Origin: Octopus sinensis
Taxonomy: Eukaryota
Reading direction: 5' to 3'
Length of the DNA stretch: 64,000 bases
NCBI RefSeq assembly: GCF_006345805.1
Contig: NC_043006.1
Location: 51,212,001 to 51,276,000, forward strand
Both the position numbers and the translations under genes were made by a program. The notes beneath the pieces were generated by a model. It saw nothing but the letters and a program-made list of their open reading frames with translations, made no database searches and was not told where the DNA came from. Shown here in pieces: positions 5,148 through 63,025 of the stretch (the first letter of the stretch is position 1; every line of letters starts with the position of its first letter).

Positions 5148-6902
5148 TTCACTTTCATATATTATGATGCCAGGCGGGCAAACTGGCAGAATAAAGAACG
5201 CGTGGTACAAAATGCTTTGCAGTATTTTTCTGGCTCTTTTATGTTCTGTGTTTATGTTCTGCCTCGGTCAACTTTGCCTTTGTTCCTTTCGAGGTTGATA
5301 GAATAAAGTACTAGGCTCGATGTAATCGACAAATTACTGACCATGAGACAAAATGTGAATGTTTGCAGAATAAAACCAGGGTTATCGTCTCGACTTAACA
5401 GCCCTCGCCGTTTGTTTTTACTGTTTTGTTCTCACTGTCCTGTTCTTGTTACCACTTTCACCCTCCGCAAAAAAAACCCAAATTTTATTTAGTTTGCTTT
5501 GCGGGAAGGACTGTTTCAATTAAGTTGCGTCTTGTCCTTGCTTTCTAAACGTGGAGAAGATGAAACAGGGACAACTGAAGAAGGGGAATATTCTTTATGT
5601 TGTATGTCTCATTTCTCGGGGGGGTGGGGGGTGGTCTCGTTGTTCGAAAAAAAGTTCGTTTCTATGTTTTTGTTTCTCATTGTGTTCAACGTTTTTTTTT
5701 TATGTCCTGTACCCATATATGCATATGTATATATACATATATGTATGTATATATGCATATATTTATATATTATTTATATTATTTTAAAATAACTTAGTTT
5801 TCCTTACAGAGAAGAAAAACATGTCAGAAGATTTAACTAGGTGAAATTAAAGAAAAGATAAGCAATGCCATAAAAAGTCAGTTATTTTGGTGGCTGTTGC
5901 TGTTTACCCCTAACCAACAACGTTCCAGTCAACCTTAAACCACCCAGCCCTTTATTTGTCCTGTAATCCAGCGCATAATCCACTGGGTGTGATTTGGGGG
6001 AAGTTTAGCTGTTATTTCTAGTAGGTAGAACTACTGCGCAGGAGAGTATCCAGCTGTAAAAATAATATGAATTCTGGAATGTTTATATTTCCTCGTTATG
6101 ATCCGATTCAAAATCTCGAATTAGATAGAATGTCGATAACATTCGCGGGAATTCTCCCTTTGCCTCTTCTCTCTATTTGTGCGTGCTAAGATCAATCAAC
6201 TTTATTGAACATGATCAAATCAATTATAGTTATCCAGGAACTAAATTTGTGTTCGTTTTTAAATAACTTCGTCAAACTAAATTTGTGTTCGTTTATAAAT
6301 GACTTCGTCAAATGAATCTTAAACAACCTAACCCACTTTGCTATAAATAGTTACAGCTAAAGTGTAGATAATCGTTGTTGGTCGCAGCAGCACTGTGAAA
6401 TTGATGAGTGTCTCTATATTGAGCTCAAGCTAAACAGGCTCTAAGATACATGCTGAGCAGGCTGTCTTCAGTGGTGCTTCAATGACACTTCATGTGAAAA
6501 ATAGCAGCATTTCTTTTAAAATTACTCCTACTTTCGAAGGATGGGAACTCAGATAGGATGGTCGTGGTTAGAATGATAGTCTAAACAGCAACAGCTTTTT
6601 TTACATTCATTTTATCTTATTTTTTCAACTTAGATATTCATGTTAATCAAGATAAGATGCGGGTAAGAAGTGGCTGGTGGTAGTGGTGGTGGCGGAGGGA
6701 CAAGTACTTGAAAAGCAAGCGAGAGTAAGAGATAAGTGTAAAAAATATTGAAGCGGAAGAAGGTAAGCCTATGAAGAATCGTAGGTAATGGAGGTGGGTG
6801 AGGTAATAATTAGGAGATGCTGGCGGAGCGGTCGGCTTGGTTGGGAGGGGGTTGGTTTCGAACATATCGTGGACGAATGAGAAAGTATGGGTGAAATATA
6901 AT

Positions 6903-7060
6903 ATTGGCTGAGTTTTAAGCAAGATTTGCCTACAAATAAATCAGAGGAAATGGGAGAGAGAGAATTTCATAAAGCGGTACAAGAGAAGGGGAGATATGTA
7001 GGAGAGAAGAGGGGAAAACTCCTCCACTATAAAACGGAGTGTTTTCGGCACCAGCAGTTA
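6903..7060 (+). promoter_or_regulatory. Core promoter of alpha-tubulin A
   Basis: Reverse CCAAT (ATTGG 6903-6907), GA-rich tract, TATAAAA at 7028-7034 and Inr-like CAGTT at 7055-7059, 28 nt after the TATA start; followed by a ~145-nt leader and ATG|GTAAGT. Confidence 0.7.
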
Positions 7061-7200
7061 CAAGCAGCTTCGCCCTCACGAAAGATACCTCATATCTGTG
7101 TGAGCGCCGCCTGCCGTGCTATTTTCCCACACAAAAAAAGAAAAAAATCTCTTCAAATTTCTTTTACTTTTTGTTCAACTGAAAACACATCAGATCCATT

Positions 7201-7203
7201 ATG
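7201..7203 (+). CDS. TUBA: Alpha-tubulin A, coding exon 1 (initiator ATG only); intron 1 = 7204..16206
   Basis: GATCCATT-ATG|GTAAGT behind a TATA/Inr. Exon 2 begins at Arg2 with no ATG, so an upstream ATG in phase 0 is required. The leader is homologous to the TUBA-B first exons. Confidence 0.8.
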
Positions 7204-10200
7204 GTAAGTTAATTATGTAACAATTAAGTAACAATGTATGACAATTTATTATGCAACAATTACTACTTTTAATTTCTTCATTAGTTTTGACACTTTTGAA
7301 ATGTTGAACTTAAATCTCAAACGATGCTGCTAATCTTTACTTCTCGTCTCTGCAATGGTTATAGTCAATACGATTTATTGACAGTAATCGCTTTAATGCA
7401 GACACTTATCCCAAAGGTTACCGATTTGTTTCACCCTCCCTCACCCCAAATATTACGATTGTGTACTACCGAAATATATTGAGCTCCGAATATTTAATTA
7501 CGTTGTGTGTTCCCCCAGATTTTTTTTTTTTTTGTGTGTGTATCACTGAAATTGATAAAATAAGTGCCAGGTAACGTATTGGTATCGATTTAAGCGATCA
7601 TATCCTCCCTCCCAGTTTGCAAAATTGTGAATTTGTGATAAAGTTTAAAATTTCGTCTGTATTGTGTCGAAAATCCCAATTGGTATATTAACTTTACTAG
7701 TCCTTATGAATAGACTGAAAAATTATTTTATTGTTCAAAAAAAAAAAACATTTCTTCAAATGAAACATCGCAGTTTATAATCAATCAAAAAAGAAAGAAA
7801 AAAAATTTGGAGTTTTATTTGCTTACCTTTTCCGTAATTTTTCAGTTTAATTTTCTTCCAGAAACTTTTTTCAGATTTGTGCTAAGAAGTTATGCAGTTT
7901 CTAAAAAAATATTATCGCAACCGTTAAAAACATAGATCTTGAAAGAAAAAAAAAATCAAATTAGGCTTGAAAAATTACAGAACGGTGGTGGGATTTTTTT
8001 TTTCTAATCGAAATTAACGATGCTTAAAGCATACACATCCGAAGAAATTACGGCTTTTGTCTCACGAAATAATTTGCGATTTTATAAGGAATTCTAGTTA
8101 CCGTTAATGGCTTCGTTATATGGCTTTAGTATAAATAACTACCCTCTTTATATTTCTCTTTTTCACTTGTCGATGTGATGCCAAACGTGCCTATCTAGTC
8201 AATTCAATTGAGGCCTATAGACAAGAGAAATCAGCTGTTTAATCCCAGATAATCCCCGATAGCAGATGTATTTCAGAAGGTTTTTTAGCTGTAACCTCTG
8301 TGTTTTTCCAAAAGTAAAATACGATGATTTTGAAGCAGACATTGGTGCGACTGAAAAGTGTAGCATAGTTCATTAATGAACTTGCACTGCAAAACTATAT
8401 TCAAATTATTGTTGACTAACAAAAAAAAAAAACATTTTTAAAGTGATTTGGCTGCTATTTCTAGCTAGATGAAAGAGCACGTAGAGGGGCTCCATACCAG
8501 CAATGTTCTGGATCAATGTGGATTTACAATCTAGAGCATCCTGCTTTTTCAGCGCATCTAGTGTGTGTCCCTATTTATTTTAAGACGATAGAATGTAGTT
8601 TGATTAAAATTTGGTTGAGGAGTCGTGTTAATTCATTATTTTACTTCACTGGTGTACTGTAAAGACGTTGCGAGCGAAATGTGTCAACCGTCGCAGGCAC
8701 TGCGTATTTTAGTAGTATACGTTATGAATCTCTGAATTTTCAATACAGTTGGGTTTAATTGACTGCTATTTCTGGCAGGTTGAGCGACGAGCTAGCCTTC
8801 AAAATCAGTTAGGAATGGCGATATAATCTGTCTAGTAGTAATAGTGATTATTCATCGTTAGGGATTCTATACATTTATTGATGAGTAATAAGTTCATCCT
8901 TCTCTGTCACCTATCCTCTACTTTTTGGTAATTTTGAGGAAAAGAATCTTTATATTCAAAGCTAAGTCCAAGATTTTTTTTCTTTTAAGATAAGAAATTC
9001 TTATCGAGCTAACGAGGCGTTCATAATGAAGCCACTCGACTTGCTAGAAACAACAGCCTAATCTACCTCGTATTACACCTACCCTCTTAGTAAAGAAAAA
9101 ATTTTTGATGGTTGTGGCTGAAATACAATAATCAAAGGCCTGGGCGATCACAGTTAACTTGCTTAAAATTCTGAACTTCCCTAACAAGTCTGGAATAAAT
9201 TTTTGTCTTTTGAAATCAATTTCTTCGTACGTTATGCAAAATAAAATTTCCACAAAAGTGATTCTATCATGACCAAAATACTTTATTCTTACTGGATTCA
9301 TAAAATTTTAGATCATTGGTGCAAATGCATATATTGTAGTTCGGGCCCACTCCAGAACTGATCGAACAGACTTATGATCAAGTAATTCCAACCATGCCCG
9401 TCTTGATGTATATGTGTTATATTGTTCAGTATATCTTTCCTTCGATTTTAAAGAAGGTAGGGTGAGGGTGTGATTTTAGGGAGATTTGATTGCTATTTTC
9501 TAACAGTTCGAATGAGAGTGTAAAAGATACGTCACCCAAGTGTTTACGTGGAGAAATATACATTTTCAAAACAGGATCGGTTAAAAAGTTGCGGCAAGAG
9601 GAACAGGCAAAGAAAAAAAAAAAAAGAAAAAACTTGTGACTGATTATTAAAAGAGATGTTAGTAAAAGAAACCAAGGCAATTAACTAGTCTTGTCGGATA
9701 TGACAAATAAAGATATTTAAACATTTGGTAAATTTTCAGATTAACACCCGCACGATTTTCACAAAAAAAAAAAAAAAAATACTCAGAGTTAATCTGAAAA
9801 TTTATCTTTTCTCCATCAAATTCTATTTTATAGCCATCTGTTTTATTGCATTCTTTTCTCTTATTTCCTACCTGAAAACTAAACTTTAAATACTTTTATC
9901 ATTTAAGAAACGGAATAAAAAAAACTAGGAGCGGTGACAACTAAGTGTCTGTTTTAACAAAGACAAATCAAATCAAAATAGATTTATCTAAATTCGTTGT
10001 TTAGAGTAAGGTCAAGGCACACCTACATCACATTCCCACATTGTGAATATTCTTTGTGTGGCTGTATGAGTCATGTATATTCTCGTGTGTGTATGATGAA
10101 TGTGTTAGGGTTTTGCTTGGTGCGTGTAATGAATGAAAATCTGTTGTAGTCTTTAATGTATAGCTCTGCAAGCATTATTGAAAATACGTGGATTATTATT

Positions 10201-14629: not shown

Positions 14630-14960
14630 GATGTGTGGTAAAGAGTTTGCTTTCCAATTGCATGGTTTCGGGTTCGGTCTCACTACGTGGCACCTTGGGC
14701 GCGTGTCGCTACTATAGACCCAGTCTGACCAAAACCTTGTAAGTAGATTTGATATATGGAAGCTTAAAGAAGCCCGTTGTGTGTGCGCGCATGTTTGTCT
14801 CTCCCCACCACACTGTTTAACAACCGGTGTTGATAGTTCAGGTCAACGTAATATGATTGTGTGACACAAGAGGCCAATTGAATAAGTACCTTGTACTGGG
14901 TGGTTGATTTATTCGACAAAAACCCTCAAGATGGTGCCCCAACATGGCCAGAAGTAAGAT
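14630..14960 (+). mobile_element. SINE family D copy
   Basis: GTGTGGTAAAGAGTTTGCTT head and AAGATGGTGCCCCAACATGGCC tail, shared with 21937, 34668, 49367 and 59650. Confidence 0.7.
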
Positions 14961-16182: not shown

Positions 16183-17669
<1,487 letters not shown>

Positions 17670-17705
17670 ATGATTTAAAGACATTTGCAAGAACGATTGC
17701 TTGAA

Positions 17706-21369: not shown

Positions 21370-21936
21370 AGCTTTTCTTTCTGCTTGTTTCAATCATGTT
21401 TAATCTGTTGTAATTTTACTTGATTTAATGAGGTACACGCTGTTGAAATCGTTCTGGTCTGAAATCACTTAAACACAAAATTTTGGGCCCTCCTTCAATC
21501 GTAGCGGCGAATGAAATAAATTTTCATGTTCTAAGGATTATCTAAATTACACAGCCGTAATTGAATTTTCATCTGTTTTCAATTCTTGTTCCATTAGTTT
21601 CGGATTACATCTCAACGCTTCTAAAGATATTTTTCTTTTGGTATCACTTAAACCAGTAGATCATTTTCTAGCATATATTTTGTAGCCATTGATACAGCAA
21701 TGGGGTCTGTCGCCTAAAGTATCATGGCAATCAACTGGTCTTATTTTATTAGTTCTTCCCACAAAAGTATGAACCAATGAAAATCTTCTTCTTGGTGGCT
21801 CGACCGGCTGGAAATAGCAGTAACATCTCCCTCAAACTACATTGTCTTGCTTTGCCTAGAATAATATGATCTTGAATAATAATTCTATGCCTAGAATATG
21901 ACACAAACATGTAAAATCAAAGACTAAACAATATAT

Positions 21937-22480
21937 AGGCGCCGGCATGGCTGTGTGGTAAGAAGTTTGCTTCCCAGCCACATGGTTCAGGGTTCAATTC
22001 CACTGTATGGCATCCTGGGCATGTGTTTTCTACTATAGCCATGTGAGTGGATTTGGTAGACGGAAATTAAAAGAAGGCCGTCATGTGTGTGTGTCCCATC
22101 ACCCCCGCTTGACAACCGTTGTTGATATGATTAGGTCCCCGTAACTTAACGGTTCGGCAAAAGTGACCGCTAGAATAGGTACCAGGCTTTACAAAAATAA
22201 TAATAATAAGTACCTATTTCTTTACAACCCACAAGGGGCTAAACACAGAGGGGGCACAAGCAAGGACAGACAAACGGATTAAGTCGATTACATCGACCCC
22301 AGTACGTAACTGGTACTTAATTAATCGACCCCGAAAGGATGAAAGGCAAAGTCGACCTCGGCGGAATTTGAACTCAGAACGTAACGGCAGACGAAATACG
22401 GCTACCGGAGTCGATTAGTTCGACTAAAATTCCTCAAGGTGGTGCCCGAGAACGGCTGCAGTCTAATAATGTAAAAAGCA
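21937..22480 (+). mobile_element. SINE family D interrupted by an antisense Tx1-tailed SINE (22215..22402)
   Basis: Family D head and tail flank an inverted insert; TACC is duplicated at 22211-22214 and 22403-22406. Confidence 0.8.
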
Positions 22481-25181: not shown

Positions 25182-26582
25182 TATTTCTTTATTACCCACA
25201 AAGGGGCCACGAAGAGGGGGACATTACAAGACGGGACATGGGGTACATAAAGTAAAAATAAAATATGAAGTAAAGATGAATTATATGTAATGAGATGGAA
25301 CGGCTTACGAACCCCCAACTCGCAGTTCCGTTTAAAATACAATTGTACATTTCACAATTACATATATTCCAGTTCAAAATACAATTTTACAGTTACATAT
25401 ATTCCAGTTCAAAGTACAATAATTTTACAGTTACATATATTCCAGTTCAAAGTACAATAATTTTACAATTTACATTTTAACATTACATATATTCCTGTTC
25501 AAAATACAACTTTACATCTTACAATTTTACAATTAACAATTTTACTTTTTAACCTTACATATATTCTAATTCTTTTATATTGGACGTTCGTCCGTCATAT
25601 ATTCTAATAGGTCCATTTGGTCTATTACATTTGGTAAATTGTCATACCGTACATAATGCGTTATATGAATAGCATTAAATATCTTTTTTAATTTTGTGTA
25701 TGTTTCTTTTTCTATAATTGCGCCTTTTACATCGTCACCATACAGTTTTGGGTTCACCTTCACCCTGACCAACCCTTTCCTACCTGCAAGTCTCTTTTCC
25801 ACTTCTGTATTCTTGATATACATCACAACTGCTTTCAGGTTTTTTCCTGTAGGCCTTCTTCCATATTTACACGATTCCAACTGCTCGTTCACTCTTGTCT
25901 CCCATTCTTGTTCAAACTCTGTCCTTGGCCGCTCTCTCGCCTTCTCTTTTACTTCCTGTTCTTTGCATGTTCTCTCTTCTTTTTCTTCTGTTATCTTGCT
26001 TTTGATTTTTTTCTTTTTTAGATCTTTCGGTGGTGATTCCACCCTTGTTCTCTTCCTATCTTCTGTTCTTTCCTCTTCTGCACTTGCTCGTTCTTCTCCC
26101 GTATCCTCATTTAGCTGCTCCTCCATTCGTGCTCTCCGCTCTTTCGCTTCCTCCTGCACTTCTCCTCCTCCACACACGCATTTTACACTCCTCTATTACA
26201 GCCTCCGGGTGCTTTTGTTTTTTTCCCGCGGGCACACATCCTTCATGTGGCCCCTCGATTTACAATTATAGCAGATTGGAGGTCTTCCCTCTACCACAAC
26301 TCTAAGCCGTGTCTCATCAGGGTAGACCAACTCCTCCGGGATGTTGTACAGGTCTCGCACGGTTATGTGTGCCAGAACCTGCACCGTATATCCCCACCAC
26401 TTAACCTCTGCTGACTTCTCCACCTTCAACACCTCCACACTATCCTTGCAGTTGAAAAGTACTGCCGCCAGCAACCTCTCCATATTAAATTCGGGCGAAA
26501 TTCTATTGATTCTCATCCTCACTGCCCTCCTTCCGCAGTAACTTGGTAGTAAAGTCCACGACGAATATTCTTCTGAGAAACC
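25182..26582 (-). mobile_element. ORF1-only non-LTR element (gag-like ORF1 with CCHC zinc knuckle, minisatellite 3'UTR, Tx1-type tail)
   Basis: ORFs 26196..26522 and 25575..26177 are in the same frame, separated by TAA TAG. VVVEGRPPICYNCKSRGHMKDVC is a C-X2-C-X4-H-X4-C knuckle. No EN/RT lies before the tail GGCCCCTTTGTGGGTAATAAAGAAATA. Confidence 0.8.
25358..25570. repeat. Minisatellite, ~35-38 bp unit, about 4-5 copies
   Basis: Repeated TTACATATATTCCAGTTCAAA(G/A)TACAA..TTTTACA. Confidence 0.9.
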
Positions 26583-30758: not shown

Positions 30759-32275
<1,517 letters not shown>

Positions 32276-34667: not shown

Positions 34668-35020
34668 CTTATTTGTTTCAGTCACTAGACTGGCCATGCT
34701 GGGGCTGCTCTGAAGAATTTTTTAGCCAAATGAATCAACCCCAGTACTTATTTTTTTAAAAAAGCCTGGTACTTATTCTATTGGTCACTTGCCAAACTGC
34801 TAAGTTACGAGGATGTAAACACACCAATACTGGTTGTCAAGTGGTGTTGGGGCAACAAACACAAAATGGGCTTCTTTCAGTTTCCATCTATCAAATCCAC
34901 TCACAAGGCTTTGATCAGCCTGAGGCTATAGTGGAAGGCACTTGTCCAAGGTACCATGCAGTGGGACTGAACCCAGAGCCATGTAGTTGGGAAATAAGCT
35001 TCTTATCACACAGCCATGTC
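34668..35020 (-). mobile_element. SINE family D copy
   Basis: Reverse complement of the family D head and tail. Confidence 0.7.
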
Positions 35021-36293
35021 TGCATATATATATATATTTAAATATTTCTCAAGTCAATATTTAAATAGGGGGTCAAATTAAGAAAACTATATATGCATCT
35101 ATCCCCACTTCCTACACCCCATGGGGCAGTACTGCCCATTTTGAGAAGCATTGTTTTATTGGAAATGTTTAGTAGTATGATGCAGGTATAGGAGCAATTG
35201 TCTTCTAGTACAGTCTTGGGCCAATCAAAGTCTTGTGAGTGAATTTGGGAGATGGAAACTGAAAGAAGCCTGCAGTGTGTATGCGTTTGTGTACTCTTAG
35301 TTTGATTTCACATGATTGTAAATGAGCATCAATCATTCCCCATCTTCTGTGAAAAATGTCTGGCCATTGGGAAAGAGATGAAGAAAGAGCATCTGGCTGT
35401 AGAAAATCTGCTTCAACAAATCTTGTCCAACCCATGCAGGCATAGAAAAATGAATGTTAAAATGAGGTTTATATTGACAGTAAATTTACTTGTATGTTCT
35501 ATGCAATGTTTCTTTATGTTTCATTAACAATTTTCTGTCACTCGCTCTCTCTCTCTCTCTCTCTCTAACAGTTTGTCCTACTAGAAATAGCAGTCAAATC
35601 TCCCTTAAAACACTACTTGTCTTAAGAAAGGGGATGACATATTAGACAATGTAATCGTATATATACAAGCAGGATGGTCATGGTTACAGTATAGATAGAC
35701 CTGCATCAGTGGTTAACAACGATGGTCAGAATACATAAAAAAAAACACAGCCATCAAATCACACCACCAATCACTAGCATAATTATATCAAACTGCCATA
35801 AATAATTTTATTGACAGATTTCTTGTTCATTTGTTTGCTTATATGAAAATGAATTTATAACAGTTGAAAATATTTAAAAATGAGACAAAATGAGAGAGCT
35901 CCTAAGTGATTGATCGAATTGTAAGAAATAACAGCCAAATTTCACTTAAATCACACCCTACTGAATTTTTCCTTCTAAATTATATAACACATTTAACAGT
36001 GGAGTACTAGATATGCAAGAAGAGAGATGATCACGATTTAAAAGCCTCTGATCAACAGAGCTCATCTATCAGGGCTAGCCTAGGGCTAATTAAGAAAAGA
36101 ATAATCACATAAAAGAACCAAGAATTCAAAATTTATAAATGTAAAAAGAAATAAGTCGGTTCACCATCCCTACATTTCTTTAGCATTCTACTTCTAATTG
36201 AATAATAAATTCAACCTCAAAACGTAAAATAGCGGTCACTCACTATATAATAATAATGATGATGTCACTGATGATAATTAAAATTAATCTTAC

Positions 36294-36296
36294 CAT
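36294..36296 (-). CDS. TUBA: Alpha-tubulin B, proximal first coding exon 1a (ATG only)
   Basis: AATCCATT-ATG|GTAAGATTAATTT; context matches TUBA-A (ATCCATT-ATG|GTAAG); conserved leader hairpin at 36423-36453. Confidence 0.8.
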
Positions 36297-38149
36297 AATG
36301 GATTTTGGATCTTAAGATAAATTGAAAGACGAAGATGAGATTGTAGTGGTATTAGTTGTTGTAGATGCTGCAGTTGTAGCAGTCGCTGGAAGGTATGGTT
36401 GTTGTAGCAGTACTACAATGTTCGCTCATGGATTCGATGTATCCTTAATGAGGCCAAATATTGGTTATGAACGTCTGAGATGGTACCATGATTTTGAGTG
36501 TATATGTGTATATGTGTGCATGCGTGTGTGAGCGCGCCTCCTATAACTACTATCCTACACAATATTTATCGATTATATTTATTATATCATTATTTACTAG
36601 ATCCAAAACGAAGTGTCGTTTTCCACATCCTCTTTTCCACCATTTCGGAAACTCAGTGCTGGATCTTACAACCACCATCACCACTACAACAACCCGCCTT
36701 TTTTTTTTTCTGCGACATCTATCTTTCATTTTGTTTACGAATGCGTCTTTTCACAAACACAGATCCGAAATAGTCATATTCATACACAAACACATACAAA
36801 CGACAGGAGACATTGAAACAATCATACATGTATTTGTGTATATACACACACACACACACACACACACATAGACACTAAAAATTATGTAATATAGTCAATA
36901 AGAACATCTATGTGGTTGTCCTACTAGCTAGAAATAGCAGCGTATCTACGTTTTAGAGAAGGCCACATTTGATAATATAGTCTTATACATACTATATAAC
37001 ATACGCAGTTTCGAGTTACGTGTTTTTGAAAAGAAATCAATGGAAAAAATAAACCTCGACTCCATTAGATTTTTATCCGACTTTACGTCGATCCCAAACA
37101 TTTAAAATTATGAAAATAAAAAACCCCACTTAAATACCTTTACCGAGGAGGAATATCAAATAATACACGTTAAAATACGTAGAAACCATTTATTAAAACA
37201 TAACTTTTTTGGAAAATGTCTTTTCGTGTTAAGTTGTTTCTTGGAAGCAATTATCGATCTATGTTGAGGTATGCCTACATGTAGTATGACTGAGACAGTG
37301 ATTGCTGTAATATCTTTGCTCAATCAGGTCTGACCTAGGATTAAACAAGAAACATTTGCACAAACACTAAAGAGGAGTAAAATATGAAAGGCATGTACAT
37401 TCACAAATACACAATCTAGATAAGTAATTTACCATAACAGACACACATATACTGTCATTCGAACGTAAACACGCAGACAACGATAAACACTAGAAGTATC
37501 TTTAAAGATTATTATATACACGAACACATGCATATATTAACTGACGCAGTGTATTTGGTTGATGGAAACTACTTAAAGCCCGTCGCGCGCGCTCATATGA
37601 ATGTGTGAGTCTGCTCCACCACTTGTCAACTGGTATTAAGTTCCTTACGTTCCGTAACTTAGAGGTCCAGCAAAAAGAGACCGATCGAATAAATACTAAA
37701 CGTAAAATAAGTACTAGGATAGATTCAATCTATAAGGCTCCAGCATAGCCGCAGTCCAATAACTGGAACAGGAGTAAAGAGCGCACGCACACACAACGAT
37801 CACATGTATGCATGTGTGTGCGCGCAGTGTGATCGCAAGAACTTCCTCGTCTATCCTCCCTAAAGTGAAACTAGTGAGATTTCGATCAGTAAATCCCAAA
37901 GCAAAAAACTTCATTACTTTGCAGAAACCAGAGATTTAACCAAAGACCTTTAGACCTTGTCTAACATGCTCCTAAACGGAGATAATTTAACTCTGCAAAA
38001 TGGTCTAATTTGTTAAAATGCCATGAAAAAGCGAATATCTTGCTGAGGTATACCTAACTAAATGCATTAAATACAAATAAAGGAAAAACTAATTCCAATA
38101 AAAATAAAAGTGTCTCAGAAAGTATAAACATTTATGGCACCAAGAGACA

Positions 38150-43503: not shown

Positions 43504-43506
43504 CAT
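43504..43506 (-). CDS. TUBA: Alpha-tubulin B, distal alternative first coding exon 1b (ATG only)
   Basis: GCCACT-ATG|GTAAGATTAATTT (13 intronic nt identical to exon 1a); leader homologous to 1a; no tubulin exon 2 found between 1b and 1a. Confidence 0.7.
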
Positions 43507-43624
43507 AGTGGCTTTTGATTTCGTTCAAGATATTCGAAAAACAAAGATGAAATCGAGAAGATAGTGATTGTTGTTAGAGTAGGTATCGCCGAAGTTGTAG
43601 TAGCAGTAGTCGTACAGCAATATT

Positions 43625-43704
43625 CGCTCACACGGACTTGATGTATCCTTTATGAGGTCGAAGATTTGTTTTGAGTGTCTGAATCGGTGTCAGTGGTTTA
43701 TATA
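43625..43704 (-). promoter_or_regulatory. Core promoter and 5'UTR hairpin of exon 1b
   Basis: TATATAAA on - at 43704-43697; predicted TSS near 43676; hairpin motif 43657-43625. Confidence 0.7.
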
Positions 43705-49366: not shown

Positions 49367-49699
49367 CTTTTACTTGTTTCAGTCATTAGACTGTGGCCAT
49401 GCTGGAGCACCACCTTGAAGAATTTTTAGTCGAATGAATCTACCTCTTTTACGCTTGGTACTTATTCTATCCGTTTCCTATTGCCGAACCGCTAAGTTAC
49501 TGGGACGTAAATACATCAATACCAGTCGTCAAGACAAACACACACACACGGCATGCTTCTTTTAGTTTTCCTCAACCAAATCCACTCACAACGCTTTGGT
49601 CAGTCTGAGACAGGAGACACTTATCCAAGGTACTACGCAGTGGGACTGAACCAGGAACCACGTGGATGGGAAGCAAACTTCTTACCACACAGCCACACC
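49367..49699 (-). mobile_element. SINE family D copy
   Basis: Reverse complement of the family D head and tail. Confidence 0.75.
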
Positions 49700-57849: not shown

Positions 57850-59820
57850 GTGCATATATATGCATATATGTTCTAATATCTACACAGCCTTGGTTTTTTT
57901 AGCTCGTTACGCAAAAAATTCTTATATGCATATATATATATGTGTGTGTGTGTGGTGTGTGTGTGTGTGTGCGTGTGTATGTATATATATGTATGTATAT
58001 ATGTATATATATATATATATATATTCATATATATATATAGCGATTATATATATATATATATATATAATATATATATATATATATTCATATATATATAGCG
58101 AGAAAGATAGAGAGACAGTCAGACAGACGTAGGCATGACTGTACGCAACGATGTCATACCGGGTTTGGTTCCATTGCAAGACACCTTTGGCGAGTGTCTT
58201 CTACTATGGTCCAGGGTTGACCAATGCTTTGTGAGTGGATTCAGTAGACGAAAACTGTGCCAAAGCCCATGATCTATGTATGTGTGTGTGTTTGCGTGCG
58301 CACGCATCCGCCGCTTCACAAACGTCTGCCTAATTTCGTAACCCAGTTTTTCATTTCACAGTTGGTTAGGTTCATTTCACTCTCAGATGATGTATGTAGT
58401 TATTGTTGTCAGTCACAGTTGAATAGATCTACGAACGTAAATGTTCCACTCATGACTATTCCGTTTTATATTCAGATTCAGTACTTCTACTTTTATTATT
58501 CTTATTTCAAATCGTACTGAGGTCAGCTTTACCCTTCTTCTTTCGCAAGGTTAACAAATTAAAGTATCACTGAAGTACTGGGGTCGATTTAATATTCCTA
58601 TAATGCGTCCTAGAAGCGAATGAAATGTTAGAAGATAAGACAAGATAGTGGAGTATATTTCACTGCTATTTTTAGCAGGTCAAACATACACATAGCGTCT
58701 ACTCCTTTGGCACACCCAATTATATGATTAAATACTCTGGTAATAACACAAACGTTCACAACTTATTGTTCAGACTTGCTACAGCTCTAATGTCGATGGA
58801 AAGTGGGGGATAAACATCTGATGATAGAAATGATAATGATGGAGATGATGAAACTTCTGATGCGGTGGCGATAGAGATGATACTGATAATGATACTGATA
58901 TAGTCAAAACTCGGTTATCAGAAAAATCAGTTATCCAGACAAAATGCTCTCAATCTGTTTTGTTCAAGCCGTCGAAATTTAACTATATATCGACGTACTG
59001 TATACAGACATAGTACGCGCACATACGCACACACTTGCACACGTACGTATGCATATTGTTGAAAATTTGGAAGAAAGTACTTAGTGCGCTTATGATATCT
59101 CAGAAATCTGTTGTTGTTTTTTTTAATTTAAAATTATCAAACAAAAATTATCTGTTTAAAAACAGATTAACACAGACCTGATGGATGATATGAAGAAAAT
59201 TTTTGTGTAAGTGCTTTCAACCGCGATTGTCTCTTTAGACACCTGTCTAAACAAAATCTAATCTCTTTTTAAAGAATTCTTTAAATACAAAGACACATAC
59301 ACACACACAAGCAGACATGAGAGCTGTCGTTAGGACGTTCGTTCATAGTCACAGGTGTTTCGAGTTCAGTCCCAGTATGCGGCACTCTGGACAGGTGTCT
59401 TCTAGTTTGGCTTTATGACCAATGCCTTGCAAGTAAGTGTACGTGTTGCGTGCGTGCGTGCGTATTTCTTAGCGCTTGGCAGCGATGTAGATTTGGTCAT
59501 GTATCTGTAGTTTGGTAGTTCGGAAAAAAGAAAGCGATAGAGTAAGTCCCAGAACTGGGGACGATTTTATCGACTAAAAAGCTCTTTAAAGCGGTGCTCC
59601 TGCATGACCATGGTCTAATAATTGACACAAGTAAAAGAAGAAATGAATAGGTGCAGGAGTGGCTGTGTAGTAAGAAGCTTGCTTCCCAAACACATGGTTC
59701 CGAGTTCAGTTACACTGCGTGGCACATTGGGCAAGAGCCTCGGGCCGACCAAAGCCTTGTGCGTGGATTTGGTAGACGAAAACTGAAAGAAACTCGTCGT
59801 ATATAAATATATATTAATTA

Positions 59821-61752: not shown

Positions 61753-63025
61753 CGAGGGGCGTTCAATAAGTAATGCCCCTGACCCACTTCCCATAGCAGT
61801 AGAGCAACGAAACTTGGCACAGTTATTAGTCTTTTTCTACATAGGAACCACCCAGAGTTACGCATTTCTCCCATTGTTTGATGCAGCTCTGGAGACCGTT
61901 TTTGTAGAAGACCTCAGCTTGGTCCTCCAACCACGACGTGACTTCAGAAATCAAGGCTGCATCATCTGGGAAACGCTTTCCTTTCAAAAACAACTTCATG
62001 GCTGGGAAGAGGTGAAAATCAGAGGGTGAAAGGTCAGGAGAGTGGGGAGGATGGGGGAGGAGTTCATAGCCGCACGCCTGTGCTTCTGATCTGATCTGGC
62101 GTTGTCCTGCAGGAGGAGGATGCCTTTGTTGATCTTGCCCCGCCTCTTGATTTTGATAGCTTCTCTTAATTTCCTCAAAAGTTAAGCATAATAGGCTCCT
62201 GTAATTGTGGTACCCTTTGCCAGGAAATCTGTCATCACTACTCCGTTCTGATCCCAGAAGACTGTGAGTATGACCTTGCCAGCGGAGAGCTGCACCCTTA
62301 CCTTCTTTGGAGGAGGTGAGTCACGGTGCTTCCACTGCATTGACTGGGCTTTGGTCTCTGGGTCATAGTGATGGACCCAGGTTTCATCCTGTGTAATCAG
62401 TCTTTTGAAAAATTTTGACTCATCTTCTTGGCACATCTCCAAATTCATCCTCCAGCACTCGACGCGTTCTTGCTTCTGGAAAGGTGTGAGCAACCTGGGA
62501 ATCCATCTGGCAGACACCTTTTGCATATGCAAATGGTCATGAATGATAGTTTCCACAGACCCGATACTAATCTTGACCTCATGGGCTATTTGGCGAATAG
62601 TTATGCGTCGATCTTCCAAAATGGCAGCCTCAACTTGACAAACAAATGCCTCATCAATGGCAGAAGGGGGCGACCAGATCTGGGAGCTGTTTCTACAGAG
62701 TTCCGACCATGTTTGAATTCACGATGCCAGCGTTTTACAGGGTCATATGATGGGGCATCATCACCATAAGTTACTTTCATTTCATCAAAAGTCTCCCGTG
62801 GTGTGTGTCCTTTCAAATACAAAAACCGGATCACTGTTCGACACTCAACAGGCTCCATTTCACACTTGACTCAGTTCAAACACCTATGAATCAGAAACCA
62901 CAATTAGTTCAGAGCTGTAATTTTCCACCTAATCTATAGAGATATAAATAATTGCACATGCAATATTTCAGCTAGATCAAACAACTGCAAGTGGGTCAGA
63001 GGCATTACTTATTGAACGTCCCTCG
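61753..63025 (-). mobile_element. Near full-length mariner (1273 bp, irritans/Himar1-like); transposase pseudogene 62858..61826
   Basis: 37-bp TIRs with 2 mismatches; TA duplication (61751-52, 63026-27); MEPVECRTVIRFL, WIPRLL, DETW, QDNAR, SPDLSPSD; one frameshift, one in-frame stop (62182-84) and a small deletion. Confidence 0.96.

What the first reader, a model, noticed from the sequence alone, without database searches (positions are those of the whole stretch)
7074..7106. Covarying RNA stem-loop conserved in all three tubulin 5' leaders
About 20 nt after each predicted TSS: A = C-CUCAC-GAA-AGAUA-CCUCA-UAUCU-GU-GUGAG-CG (7074-7106); B1b = C-CUCAU-AAA-GGAUA-CAUCA-AGUCC-GU-GUGAG-CG (43657-43625); B1a = C-CUCAU-UAA-GGAUA-CAUCG-AAUCC-AUGAG-CG (36453-36423). 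A and B1b match at 26/33 while the rest of the A leader is not alignable. Substitutions keep pairing: top of lower stem C-G / U.G / U-A; base of upper stem A-U / G-C / G-C; another pair U-A / U.G / U-A. This suggests selection on structure. I do not recognise it as a known element (it lacks the IRE CAGUGN loop). It may be a cap-proximal translation or localisation switch for tubulin mRNA (inference).
Basis: partly seen in the sequence, partly recalled or inferred. Interest (0 to 1): 0.85.

Follow-up and report, generated by a model that had tools for sequence, protein, structure and literature searches.

The report
Conserved hairpin in octopus tubulin leaders
A 33-36 base palindromic element sits just downstream of the predicted start of transcription in all three leader exons of two octopus alpha-tubulin genes and in an argonaut octopus; it is clearly under selection and probably acts as a small protein-binding RNA hairpin near the mRNA cap, but a DNA-level promoter role is not excluded.

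Summary
The three sequences lie exactly where stated, and the motif occurs nowhere else in the window. It is the only conserved island in promoters and leaders that otherwise cannot be aligned.

Corrections:
- The window is Octopus sinensis.
- It holds two tubulin genes, both alpha.
- "B1a" and "B1b" are tandem alternative first exons of one gene.
- B1a is a damaged copy: it has no TATA box, and a 2-nt deletion creates an upstream ATG.

I found a fourth copy, 28/33 identical to B1b, in the first exon of an Argonauta hians alpha-tubulin gene. A gastropod (Littorina) alpha-tubulin leader lacks it.

RNAalifold predicts the same bulged hairpin for all four copies. There is one compensatory pair. 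All six non-Watson-Crick cells are G.U on the sense strand, and random placement of the observed substitutions rarely keeps pairing this well (p about 0.01-0.08). Against this, the tool's shuffle test is not significant, the Argonauta hairpin is thermodynamically unremarkable, and the TSS is only predicted.

There is no Rfam match, and the motif is not an IRE.

Best reading (about 0.5): a cap-proximal, protein-binding RNA stem-loop that controls alpha-tubulin mRNA translation or localisation. Main rival (about 0.3): a downstream promoter DNA element.

The parts
7071..7106 (+). Element copy A (gene 1). Outer pairs 7071-7106 and 7072-7105; 2-nt bulge 7073-7074. Lower stem 7075-7080 with 7099-7104. 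Internal loop AA 7081-7082 opposite G 7098. Upper stem 7083-7087 with 7093-7097. Loop 7088-7092.
   Evidence: CM 61 bits. MFE -9.6 kcal/mol, z -3.1 to -3.2.
43625..43660 (-). Element copy B1b (distal first exon of gene 2). Same bulged hairpin with a 4-bp upper stem and a 7-nt loop ACAUCAA. The flanking UUCG/CGAA can extend the helix.
   Evidence: CM 69 bits. MFE -9.4 kcal/mol, z -2.9 to -3.7.
36423..36456 (-). Element copy B1a (proximal first exon of gene 2). A 2-nt deletion removes the bulged G and its neighbour. The hairpin is kept (5 + 4 bp), but an upstream ATG is created at 36429-36427.
   Evidence: MFE -6.0 to -6.5 kcal/mol.
7028..7034 (+). TATA box (TATAAAA) of gene 1, starting 46 nt upstream of the motif.
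   Evidence: Read from the sequence; the TSS was not mapped.
43697..43704 (-). TATA box (TATATAAA) of the B1b promoter, starting 45-47 nt upstream of the motif.
7056..7203 (+). Predicted first exon of alpha-tubulin gene 1: a leader of about 145 nt ending in the ATG (7201-7203), followed by donor GTAAGT. The 94 nt between the motif and the ATG contain 8.5% G.
   Evidence: The 5' end is inferred from TATA and an Inr-like GCAGTT.
43504..43680 (-). Predicted distal first exon (B1b) of alpha-tubulin gene 2, with ATG at 43506-43504 and donor GTAAG. The annotated CDS range on record for this gene starts at this ATG.
36294..36476 (-). Predicted proximal alternative first exon (B1a) of gene 2, with ATG at 36296-36294 and donor GTAAG. 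It has no TATA box and carries a 25-codon uORF at 36429-36352.
16207..17669 (+). Exons 2 (16207-16429) and 3 (16543-17669) of alpha-tubulin gene 1.
30759..32209 (-). Exons 2 (32209-31987) and 3 (31885-30759) of alpha-tubulin gene 2.

Best explanation
The element is a sense-strand RNA stem-loop at the 5' end of octopod alpha-tubulin mRNAs. Its base lies roughly 13-24 nt from the cap.

Structure:
- two outer pairs, then a 2-nt bulge;
- a 6-bp lower stem (CUCAYN / NRUGAG);
- a conserved AA/G internal loop;
- a 4-5-bp upper stem;
- a 5-7-nt loop with conserved C, U and C.

The rest of the leader is G-poor and unstructured, so the hairpin is the one structured feature. At -6 to -10 kcal/mol it is too weak to stop scanning by itself. 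It most likely works as the docking site of a sequence- and shape-specific RNA-binding protein. Bound that close to the cap, such a protein would hinder 43S/eIF4F loading, as IRP does on the ferritin IRE. That would keep alpha-tubulin mRNA masked for storage or transport until it is released.

Shown: conservation, foldability and pair-preserving substitutions. Inferred: presence in the mRNA, protein binding, and the direction of the effect.
For: Selection.
- The motif is the only conserved island in promoters and leaders that otherwise cannot be aligned.
- The coding regions of the two paralogues are homogenised by gene conversion that stops sharply at exon 2 and at the stop codon.
- A fourth copy in Argonauta hians is 28/33 identical to B1b. 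Outside the CDS and shared repeats, Octopus and Argonauta DNA is not alignable.

Structure.
- Each Octopus copy folds into the same bulged hairpin, alone and within its leader.
- RNAalifold returns that structure for the four-way alignment.
- 97.4% of cells are paired, against 18-68% when the partners are slid.

Substitution pattern.
- One compensatory A-U <-> G-C pair, and a C-G -> U.G -> U-A series.
- All 6 non-Watson-Crick cells are G.U on the sense strand; none is A.C.
- Placing the 13 inferred substitutions at random leaves 1 or fewer unpaired cells in only 1.1% of trials. The figure is 2.7% if changes are confined to positions 6-27, and 8% if confined to the observed variable columns.
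- The B1a deletion removes exactly the bulged G and its neighbour and leaves a continuous helix.

Context.
- Conserved unpaired bases (AA, G, and loop C/U/C) are typical of protein contacts.
- Leaders downstream of the motif have 7.6-11% G, against 18.9% in the window, and are rich in CAA. This is a strand-specific property expected of a 5' UTR.
- The distance to the ATG varies (79-126 nt), whereas the distance to the TATA box is fixed (45-47 nt). The constraint is therefore cap-side.
- In octopus retina, alpha-tubulin mRNA and protein levels change in opposite directions between light and dark, which points to translational control of this mRNA (PMC2493028).
Against: - Only four copies from two species. 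The tool's column-shuffle control is not significant (130/500).
- The structure was derived from these same sequences, so my simulations are post hoc.
- The Argonauta copy has a weak upper stem (two G.U pairs) and folds no better than shuffles (z = 0.08). Antisense folds are as good as or better than sense for A and B1a.
- The most conserved parts are the two arms of the lower stem, which never covary. Their sequence, not only their pairing, is constrained.
- The TSS is unmapped. No transcript, trans-factor or functional data are available.
- The fixed distance from the TATA box fits a promoter element equally well.
Confidence: 0.5

Rival explanations
1. The element is a DNA-level downstream promoter element. 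In this reading the dyad-symmetric sequence at about +13 to +48 is bound as double-stranded DNA by a transcription factor or a core-promoter factor that drives or tunes alpha-tubulin transcription. The RNA hairpin would be a by-product of the palindrome.
For: - The distance from the TATA box is fixed (45-47 nt in A and B1b), while the distance to the ATG varies.
- The invariant blocks are contiguous (CCTCA and TGAGCG) and do not covary.
- Folding is strand-neutral for A and B1a, and there is no thermodynamic signal in Argonauta.
- An RGWYV-like pentamer (AGATA/GGATA) lies near the DPE position in the Octopus copies.
- Precedents from my own knowledge, not tested here: the shared 'tub box' promoter elements of Chlamydomonas tubulin genes and the downstream element beta2DE1 of Drosophila beta2-tubulin.
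Against: - All departures from Watson-Crick symmetry are G.T on the sense strand and never A.C (6 vs 0). A double-stranded DNA palindrome gives no reason for that.
- There is a compensatory A-T <-> G-C change at symmetric positions.
- B1a tolerates a 2-bp change in arm spacing.
- The DPE-like pentamer is lost in Argonauta (GGGTG).
- Promoters A and B1b have TATA boxes. Spacing to the Inr-like motifs is not constant (+19 and +24 in Octopus, about +30 to +39 in Argonauta).
- I recognised no match to MTE, pause-button, GATA or ETS consensus sequences across all four copies (by inspection).
Confidence: 0.3
2. There is no function of its own. In this reading the similarity is residual homology, or a short gene-conversion tract between duplicated first exons, carried along with the concerted evolution of the two alpha-tubulin genes.
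For: The two genes clearly exchange sequence: the CDS is 96% identical, with only 5% difference at fourfold-degenerate sites. B1a and B1b are tandem duplicates.
Against: - The conversion tract ends 13 nt upstream of exon 2, kilobases away from the leaders.
- The sequences flanking the motif are near random identity, 25-52% in an optimised alignment.
- The motif is kept at 26-28/33 (A and B1b) in Argonauta, where even the CDS is only 87-88% identical and no unique non-coding DNA aligns.
Confidence: 0.07
3. The element is a relic or exapted tRNA-like B-box (a TFIIIC site, or a SINE-derived sequence). The 3' half of the loop and upper stem reads TTCAAGTCC (Argonauta) or ATCGAATCC (B1a), which resembles GGTTCRANYCC.
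For: Matches to the B-box consensus are 10/11 in Argonauta and 8/11 in B1a and B1b (by inspection). This is a resemblance recalled from memory.
Against: - Copy A matches only about 6/11.
- The position equivalent to G53 is an invariant C in all four copies.
- The pairing register differs from that of a T-arm.
- ARAGORN finds no tRNA-like gene in the window, and Rfam gives no hit.
- It is a post-hoc match of a short motif, with a chance of about 1-2% per element for the 8-nt core.
Confidence: 0.03

Closest known systems
Iron-responsive element (IRE) bound by IRP in ferritin-type 5' UTRs
   Same: Both are small bulged hairpins (lower stem, bulge or internal loop, a 4-5-bp upper stem, and an apical loop with conserved bases) of modest stability, placed near the cap. 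The proposed mechanism, a bound protein blocking 43S recruitment, is modelled on the IRE (established knowledge).
   Different: The loop is RCNUCRW or CCUCA, not CAGUGN. The internal loop is AA/G rather than a 5' C bulge. There is no hit to Rfam IRE models. The host genes are tubulins. The binding protein is unknown.
Collagen 5' stem-loop bound by LARP6 (PMC4615758)
   Same: Both are bipartite stem-loops with a functionally important single-stranded bulge, conserved in the 5' UTRs of paralogous mRNAs whose UTRs otherwise differ. The collagen element is thought to coordinate translation of subunits of one polymer.
   Different: The collagen 5'SL encompasses the start codon and is a vertebrate element. 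Here the element is cap-proximal, 79-126 nt upstream of the ATG, and there is no sequence similarity. Only alpha-tubulin genes were seen here; beta-tubulin was not examined.
Drosophila Mst(3)CGP/Mst87F translational control element (TCE), a cap-proximal 12-nt leader element shared by paralogues (recalled from memory)
   Same: Both are leader elements at a fixed, cap-proximal position shared by a paralogous gene family. The B-copy loop ACATCAA / ACATCGA matches the first 7 nt of ACATCNAAATTT.
   Different: The match does not extend further and is absent from copies A and Argonauta. The TCE is not described as a hairpin.
TTC5-mediated tubulin autoregulation (PMC10403363, PMC11570694)
   Same: Both concern post-transcriptional control specific to tubulin mRNAs. 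Both octopus genes encode the MREC N-terminus that TTC5 recognises.
   Different: Autoregulation reads the nascent peptide, not an RNA element. The hairpin would be an additional, independent layer of control.
Core-promoter downstream elements (DPE/MTE) and shared tubulin promoter boxes (Chlamydomonas 'tub box'; recalled from memory)
   Same: Both lie just downstream of the TSS at a fixed distance from the TATA box, and the Octopus copies carry an RGWYV-like pentamer. This is the analogue for the rival DNA-level reading.
   Different: The pentamer is not conserved in Argonauta. The promoters contain TATA boxes. Spacing to the Inr-like motifs is inconsistent. The element is 33-36 bp long and palindromic.

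Membership tests
IRE (Rfam IRE_I / IRE_II) | Six-nucleotide apical loop CAGUGN | tested here: not met
   The loops are CCUCA (or ACCUCAU), ACAUCAA, ACAUCGA and GCUUCAA.
IRE (Rfam IRE_I / IRE_II) | Unpaired C (or UGC/C internal loop) five base pairs 5' of the loop | tested here: not met
   The interruption is AA on the 5' strand opposite G on the 3' strand, four pairs below the loop.
IRE (Rfam IRE_I / IRE_II) | Scores against the curated covariance model | tested here: not met
   No Rfam family reaches its gathering score in the window. Only chance-level hits to unrelated families appear at E <= 10 around copy A.
IRE (Rfam IRE_I / IRE_II) | Cap-proximal position in a 5' UTR (within about 60 nt of the cap) | tested here: inconclusive
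   The predicted position is +13 to +24 from TATA or Inr-like sequences. The TSS is not mapped.
Collagen 5'SL (LARP6 site) | The stem-loop encompasses the translation start codon | tested here: not met
   The element ends 79-126 nt upstream of the ATG.
Collagen 5'SL (LARP6 site) | LARP6 binding to the bulge nucleotides | not testable with these tools
   Needs binding assays.
DPE core-promoter element | RGWYV exactly at +28 to +32 from the Inr A+1, conserved among orthologues | tested here: not met
   AGATA or GGATA would lie at +28 (A, Inr GCAGTT) but at +33 (B1a and B1b, Inr TCAGAC). Argonauta has GGGTG, which fails W. TSS positions are predictions only.
tRNA-type B-box / TFIIIC site | GGTTCRANYCC with G53 and C56; a tRNA-like gene or an isolated B-box | tested here: not met
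   The G53 equivalent is C in all copies, and copy A matches about 6/11. ARAGORN finds no tRNA.
Conserved structured cis-regulatory RNA (generic criterion: significant covariation) | Statistically supported compensatory substitutions across homologues | tested here: inconclusive
   There is 1 compensatory pair, and 4 pairs with one-sided wobble changes. Shuffles are not significant at 130/500. Substitution-placement simulations give p = 0.011 to 0.08. Only 4 sequences are available.
Conserved structured cis-regulatory RNA (generic criterion: transcribed) | The element lies within the mature transcript | not testable with these tools
   I could retrieve no cDNA or RNA-seq contig. Indirect support: the annotated CDS range on record starts at the B1b ATG, and the leaders have a G-poor, strand-specific composition.

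The most novel reading that the evidence does not exclude
The hairpin is an octopod (perhaps cephalopod-wide) RNA 'address or masking tag' bound by a dedicated RNA-binding protein. It would give alpha-tubulin mRNAs, and possibly other cytoskeletal mRNAs carrying the same tag, a layer of translational or localisation control that is independent of TTC5 autoregulation. Possible settings are axonal or photoreceptor transport and light-dependent unmasking.
Probability: 0.35. Interest if true: 0.6.

Novelty: new member of a known kind. Interest (0 to 1): 0.4.

Why it matters
Tubulin synthesis is classically thought to be tuned through the nascent peptide (TTC5 autoregulation), not through UTR structures. 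A selected, cap-proximal hairpin shared by paralogous alpha-tubulin mRNAs would add an RNA-based control layer. It occurs in an animal group known for large neurons, long axons and extensive post-transcriptional regulation. It also gives a concrete 36-nt bait for finding the binding protein and any co-regulated mRNAs. If it turns out to be a DNA element instead, it defines a lineage-specific tubulin promoter module that could be useful for cephalopod transgenesis.

Tried and rejected
Search for more orthologues. This was the decisive evidence, and it failed.
Ids that the listing of cluster members had returned while I was identifying the organism were accepted. They yielded the Argonauta locus and the window's own locus.
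- The E. dofleini protein and the window's exon-3 ORF are not on record.
- A chimeric query made of leader-ORF translations gave no hit.
- A profile of cephalopod-type C-terminal tails returned only short unnamed fragments without the cephalopod tail signature.
- Ten further clusters contained no cephalopods.
- The JGI metagenome scan for the motif returned 0 matches.

Deeper conservation.
- The Littorina saxatilis alpha-tubulin locus has the same first-exon design (leader + ATG|GTAAGT) but no motif, by regex, by covariance model, and by folding.

Extra copies.
- Covariance model R1 finds only the four training copies in the window, L001 and L003. A 14.9-bit hit at 5952-5981 is not homologous on inspection.

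Readings I considered and set aside.
- IRE, DPE/MTE, pause button, GATA or ETS sites (by inspection), tRNA B-box, miRNA precursor (the hairpin is too short), and uORF peptide (no start codon in frame in copies A, B1b or Argonauta).
- The Argonauta annotated start (L001:10001) has a CAA-rich leader resembling B1a but no motif.

Full report
**What is in the window**

The window comes from Octopus sinensis chromosome CM016868.1. It contains two tubulin genes, and both are alpha-tubulin (MREC at the N-terminus, EEY/DEY at the C-terminus).
- Gene 1 (+ strand): first exon ending in ATG 7201-7203, exon 2 at 16207-16429, exon 3 at 16543-17669. It matches XP_029641493.1.
- Gene 2 (- strand): exon 2 at 32209-31987, exon 3 at 31885-30759. 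It matches XP_029641494.1.

In each gene the first exon carries only the leader and the ATG, followed by GTAAG.

Gene 2 has two such promoter-leader-ATG modules in tandem. B1b is distal (ATG 43506-43504); the annotated CDS range on record starts at this ATG. B1a is proximal (ATG 36296-36294). The finding's 'three tubulin leaders' are therefore one leader of gene 1 and two alternative leaders of gene 2. No beta-tubulin gene is involved.

**Check of the observation**

The three sequences are exactly as quoted, at the stated coordinates. A degenerate 24-nt pattern with up to three mismatches hits only these three sites in 64 kb, and 100 shuffles gave none.

The two coding regions are 96% identical, with only 5% difference at fourfold-degenerate sites. 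That similarity begins 13 nt before exon 2 and ends 2 nt after the stop codon. Intron 1, the 3' UTRs and the leaders do not align. This is the signature of old paralogues whose CDS is homogenised by gene conversion. Consistent with that, both Octopus genes are only 87-88% identical to the Argonauta CDS.

Within the leaders, blastn finds only the motif (7068-7106 vs 43663-43625) and the ATG/donor region. In a four-way alignment the best 36-column window over the motif has 21 invariant columns. No other stepped window has more than 10, except the ATG/donor region with up to 13. Pairwise identity is 65-83% in the motif and 25-52% in the flanks.

**A fourth copy, and the limit of conservation**

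The Argonauta hians alpha-tubulin locus L001 (a different octopod family) carries CCTCACGAAGGGTGCTTCAAGTCCGTGTGAGCG at L001:2143-2175. An ATG|GTAAGT follows 79 nt downstream. This copy is 28/33 identical to B1b and 26/33 to A.

It lies 7.7 kb upstream of the annotated start codon (L001:10001). That annotated start has a poor donor (GTTTGT) and no motif.

Apart from the CDS and interspersed repeats, nothing else aligns between the two species. The motif is therefore under purifying selection.

The gastropod Littorina saxatilis has the same first-exon design but no motif and no comparable hairpin. A covariance model built from the four copies finds nothing further in the 122 kb I hold.

**Anatomy**

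All Octopus copies fold into the same structure, both alone and within their leaders. RNAalifold returns it for the four-way alignment. It consists of:
- a 6-bp lower stem (CUCAYN / NRUGAG);
- an AA/G internal loop;
- a 4-5-bp upper stem;
- a 5-7-nt loop with invariant C, U and C.

Two further pairs (YG with the terminal CG) and a 2-nt bulge extend it to 36 nt (7071-7106). Stability is modest, at -6 to -9.6 kcal/mol.

In A and B1b a TATA box starts 45-47 nt upstream. That puts the base of the hairpin at about +13 to +16. Using the Inr-like TCAGAC of the B copies it would be +24.

The leader between the motif and the ATG varies in length (79-126 nt). It is G-poor (7.6-11% G, against 18.9% in the window), rich in CAA and A, and free of upstream ATGs.

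B1a is the exception. Its 2-nt deletion inside the motif creates an ATG that opens a 25-codon uORF, and it lacks a TATA box. B1a looks like a degenerating or differently regulated copy.

**RNA or DNA?**

For RNA:
- 97.4% of stem cells are paired, against 18-68% when the partners are slid.
- One pair changes on both sides (A-U in A, G-C in the other three).
- One pair runs C-G / U.G / U-A.
- Four pairs vary on one side only, through wobble.
- All six non-Watson-Crick cells are G.U on the sense strand and none is A.C. A double-stranded DNA palindrome would not predict that.
- The B1a deletion removes the bulged G and its neighbour and leaves a continuous helix.
- I inferred 13 substitutions and re-placed them at random, keeping lineage sharing and transition/transversion class. 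One or fewer unpaired cells resulted in 1.1% of trials. The figure was 2.7% with changes confined to positions 6-27, and 8% with changes confined to the observed variable columns.

Against RNA:
- The tool's shuffle control is not significant (130/500).
- The structure was derived from these same sequences.
- The Argonauta hairpin is no better than shuffled sequence (z = 0.08).
- The antisense strand folds as well as or better than the sense strand for A and B1a.
- The most conserved bases are the two arms of the lower stem, which never covary.
- The fixed distance to the TATA box suits a promoter element just as well.
- The TSS is unmapped, and I could retrieve no transcript.

Among specific DNA readings, the DPE-like pentamer fails in Argonauta and its spacing is inconsistent. 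A B-box resemblance fails in copy A and at the G53 position, and ARAGORN finds no tRNA.

**Mechanism proposed**

My best reading (about 0.5) is a cap-proximal, protein-binding RNA stem-loop. It is too weak to block scanning alone. It sits in an otherwise unstructured leader, where a bound protein would prevent 43S loading. This follows IRE/IRP logic, which is established knowledge.

Alternatively, the hairpin could recruit a factor that coordinates or localises translation, as LARP6 does on the collagen 5' stem-loop (PMC4615758).

Octopus retina shows opposite light/dark changes of alpha-tubulin mRNA and protein (PMC2493028), so translational control of this mRNA is plausible. That paper examined only the 3' UTR.

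This control would be independent of TTC5 autoregulation, which reads the MREC nascent peptide (PMC10403363). Both genes encode that peptide.

Rivals:
- a DNA-level downstream promoter element (0.3);
- conversion or hitch-hiking without function (0.07);
- a B-box/TFIIIC relic (0.03).

**Comparison with known families, and novelty**

There is no Rfam match at gathering thresholds, nor any meaningful match at E <= 10. The element is not an IRE (loop and bulge tests failed) and not a collagen-type 5'SL (it does not span the ATG).

It works like, but is not a member of, these families. If confirmed it would be a new member of the known kind 'cap-proximal protein-binding 5' UTR stem-loops'. So far it is restricted to octopods.

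**Verdict**

The 'covarying RNA' interpretation is plausible but statistically only suggestive. The function is inferred. Interest is moderate (0.4). The decisive data are cephalopod-wide comparison, TSS mapping, and tests that separate the RNA level from the DNA level with compensatory mutants.

Noticed in passing
window 16194-17671 (+) vs 32223-30757 (-): The two convergent alpha-tubulin paralogues show concerted evolution. The CDS plus the short intron 2 are 93-96% identical, with 5% difference at fourfold sites. The identity has sharp ends at exon 2 and at the stop codon, while intron 1, the leaders and the 3' UTRs are unalignable. Both genes are only 87-88% identical to the Argonauta CDS.
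   Followed up: partly
window 36352-36429 (-), and the B1a promoter around 36476-36510: The 2-nt deletion in the B1a copy of the motif creates an upstream ATG that opens a 25-codon uORF. This module also lacks the TATA box present in B1b. It may be a decaying or differently regulated alternative first exon.
   Followed up: partly
L001:2255-2257 vs L001:10001: In Argonauta hians the annotated start codon (ATG|GTTTGT, no motif) is 7.7 kb downstream of a motif-bearing exon ending in ATG|GTAAGT. The annotated first exon may be wrong, or it may be a second (B1a-like) alternative. Its upstream region shares a CAA-rich stretch with the B1a leader.
   Followed up: partly
window 7107-7200, 43624-43507, 36422-36297; L001:2176-2254: The leaders downstream of the hairpin are strongly G-poor on the sense strand (7.6-11% G vs 18.9% in the window) and rich in CAA and A. 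This resembles unstructured, efficiently scanned leaders.
   Followed up: yes
window 34868-34952, 35203-35272, 59736-59802, 14687-14780, 49556-49639, 22037-22082; L001 about 6373-6429, 6972-7063, 7546-7641, 9527-9612, 21462-21537, 21797-21884: A short interspersed repeat of about 50-95 nt is present in many copies in both Octopus and Argonauta, at 74-91% identity. It is probably a SINE-like element shared by octopods.
   Followed up: no
window 62182-62619 (-); 25575-26522 (-): These are transposable-element remnants, judged by reading the translations only. One ORF looks like a mariner/Tc1-type transposase fragment. Two adjacent ORFs include a CCHC zinc-knuckle (CYNCKSRGHMKDVCP), typical of a retroelement Gag.
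   Followed up: no
L003:9840-10003: Littorina saxatilis alpha-tubulin shares the ancient gene design (exon 1 = leader + ATG, then GTAAGT) but has no copy of the motif. A CCTCAC...(CG)n...GTGA palindrome about 150 nt upstream of its ATG is low-complexity and does not fold significantly.
   Followed up: yes
L001:16839-19354 (-): A second, convergently oriented alpha-tubulin gene in Argonauta is of a more generic isotype (tail VGIDS...). Its first exon lies beyond the end of the fetched locus, so I could not check whether it carries the motif.
   Followed up: no
window 7087-7097, 43644-43634, 36440-36430; L001:2156-2166: The loop and 3' arm of the upper stem resemble a tRNA B-box (TTCAAGTCC, ATCGAATCC). 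This was noticed post hoc. It is not supported by copy A or by the invariant C at the G53-equivalent position.
   Followed up: partly
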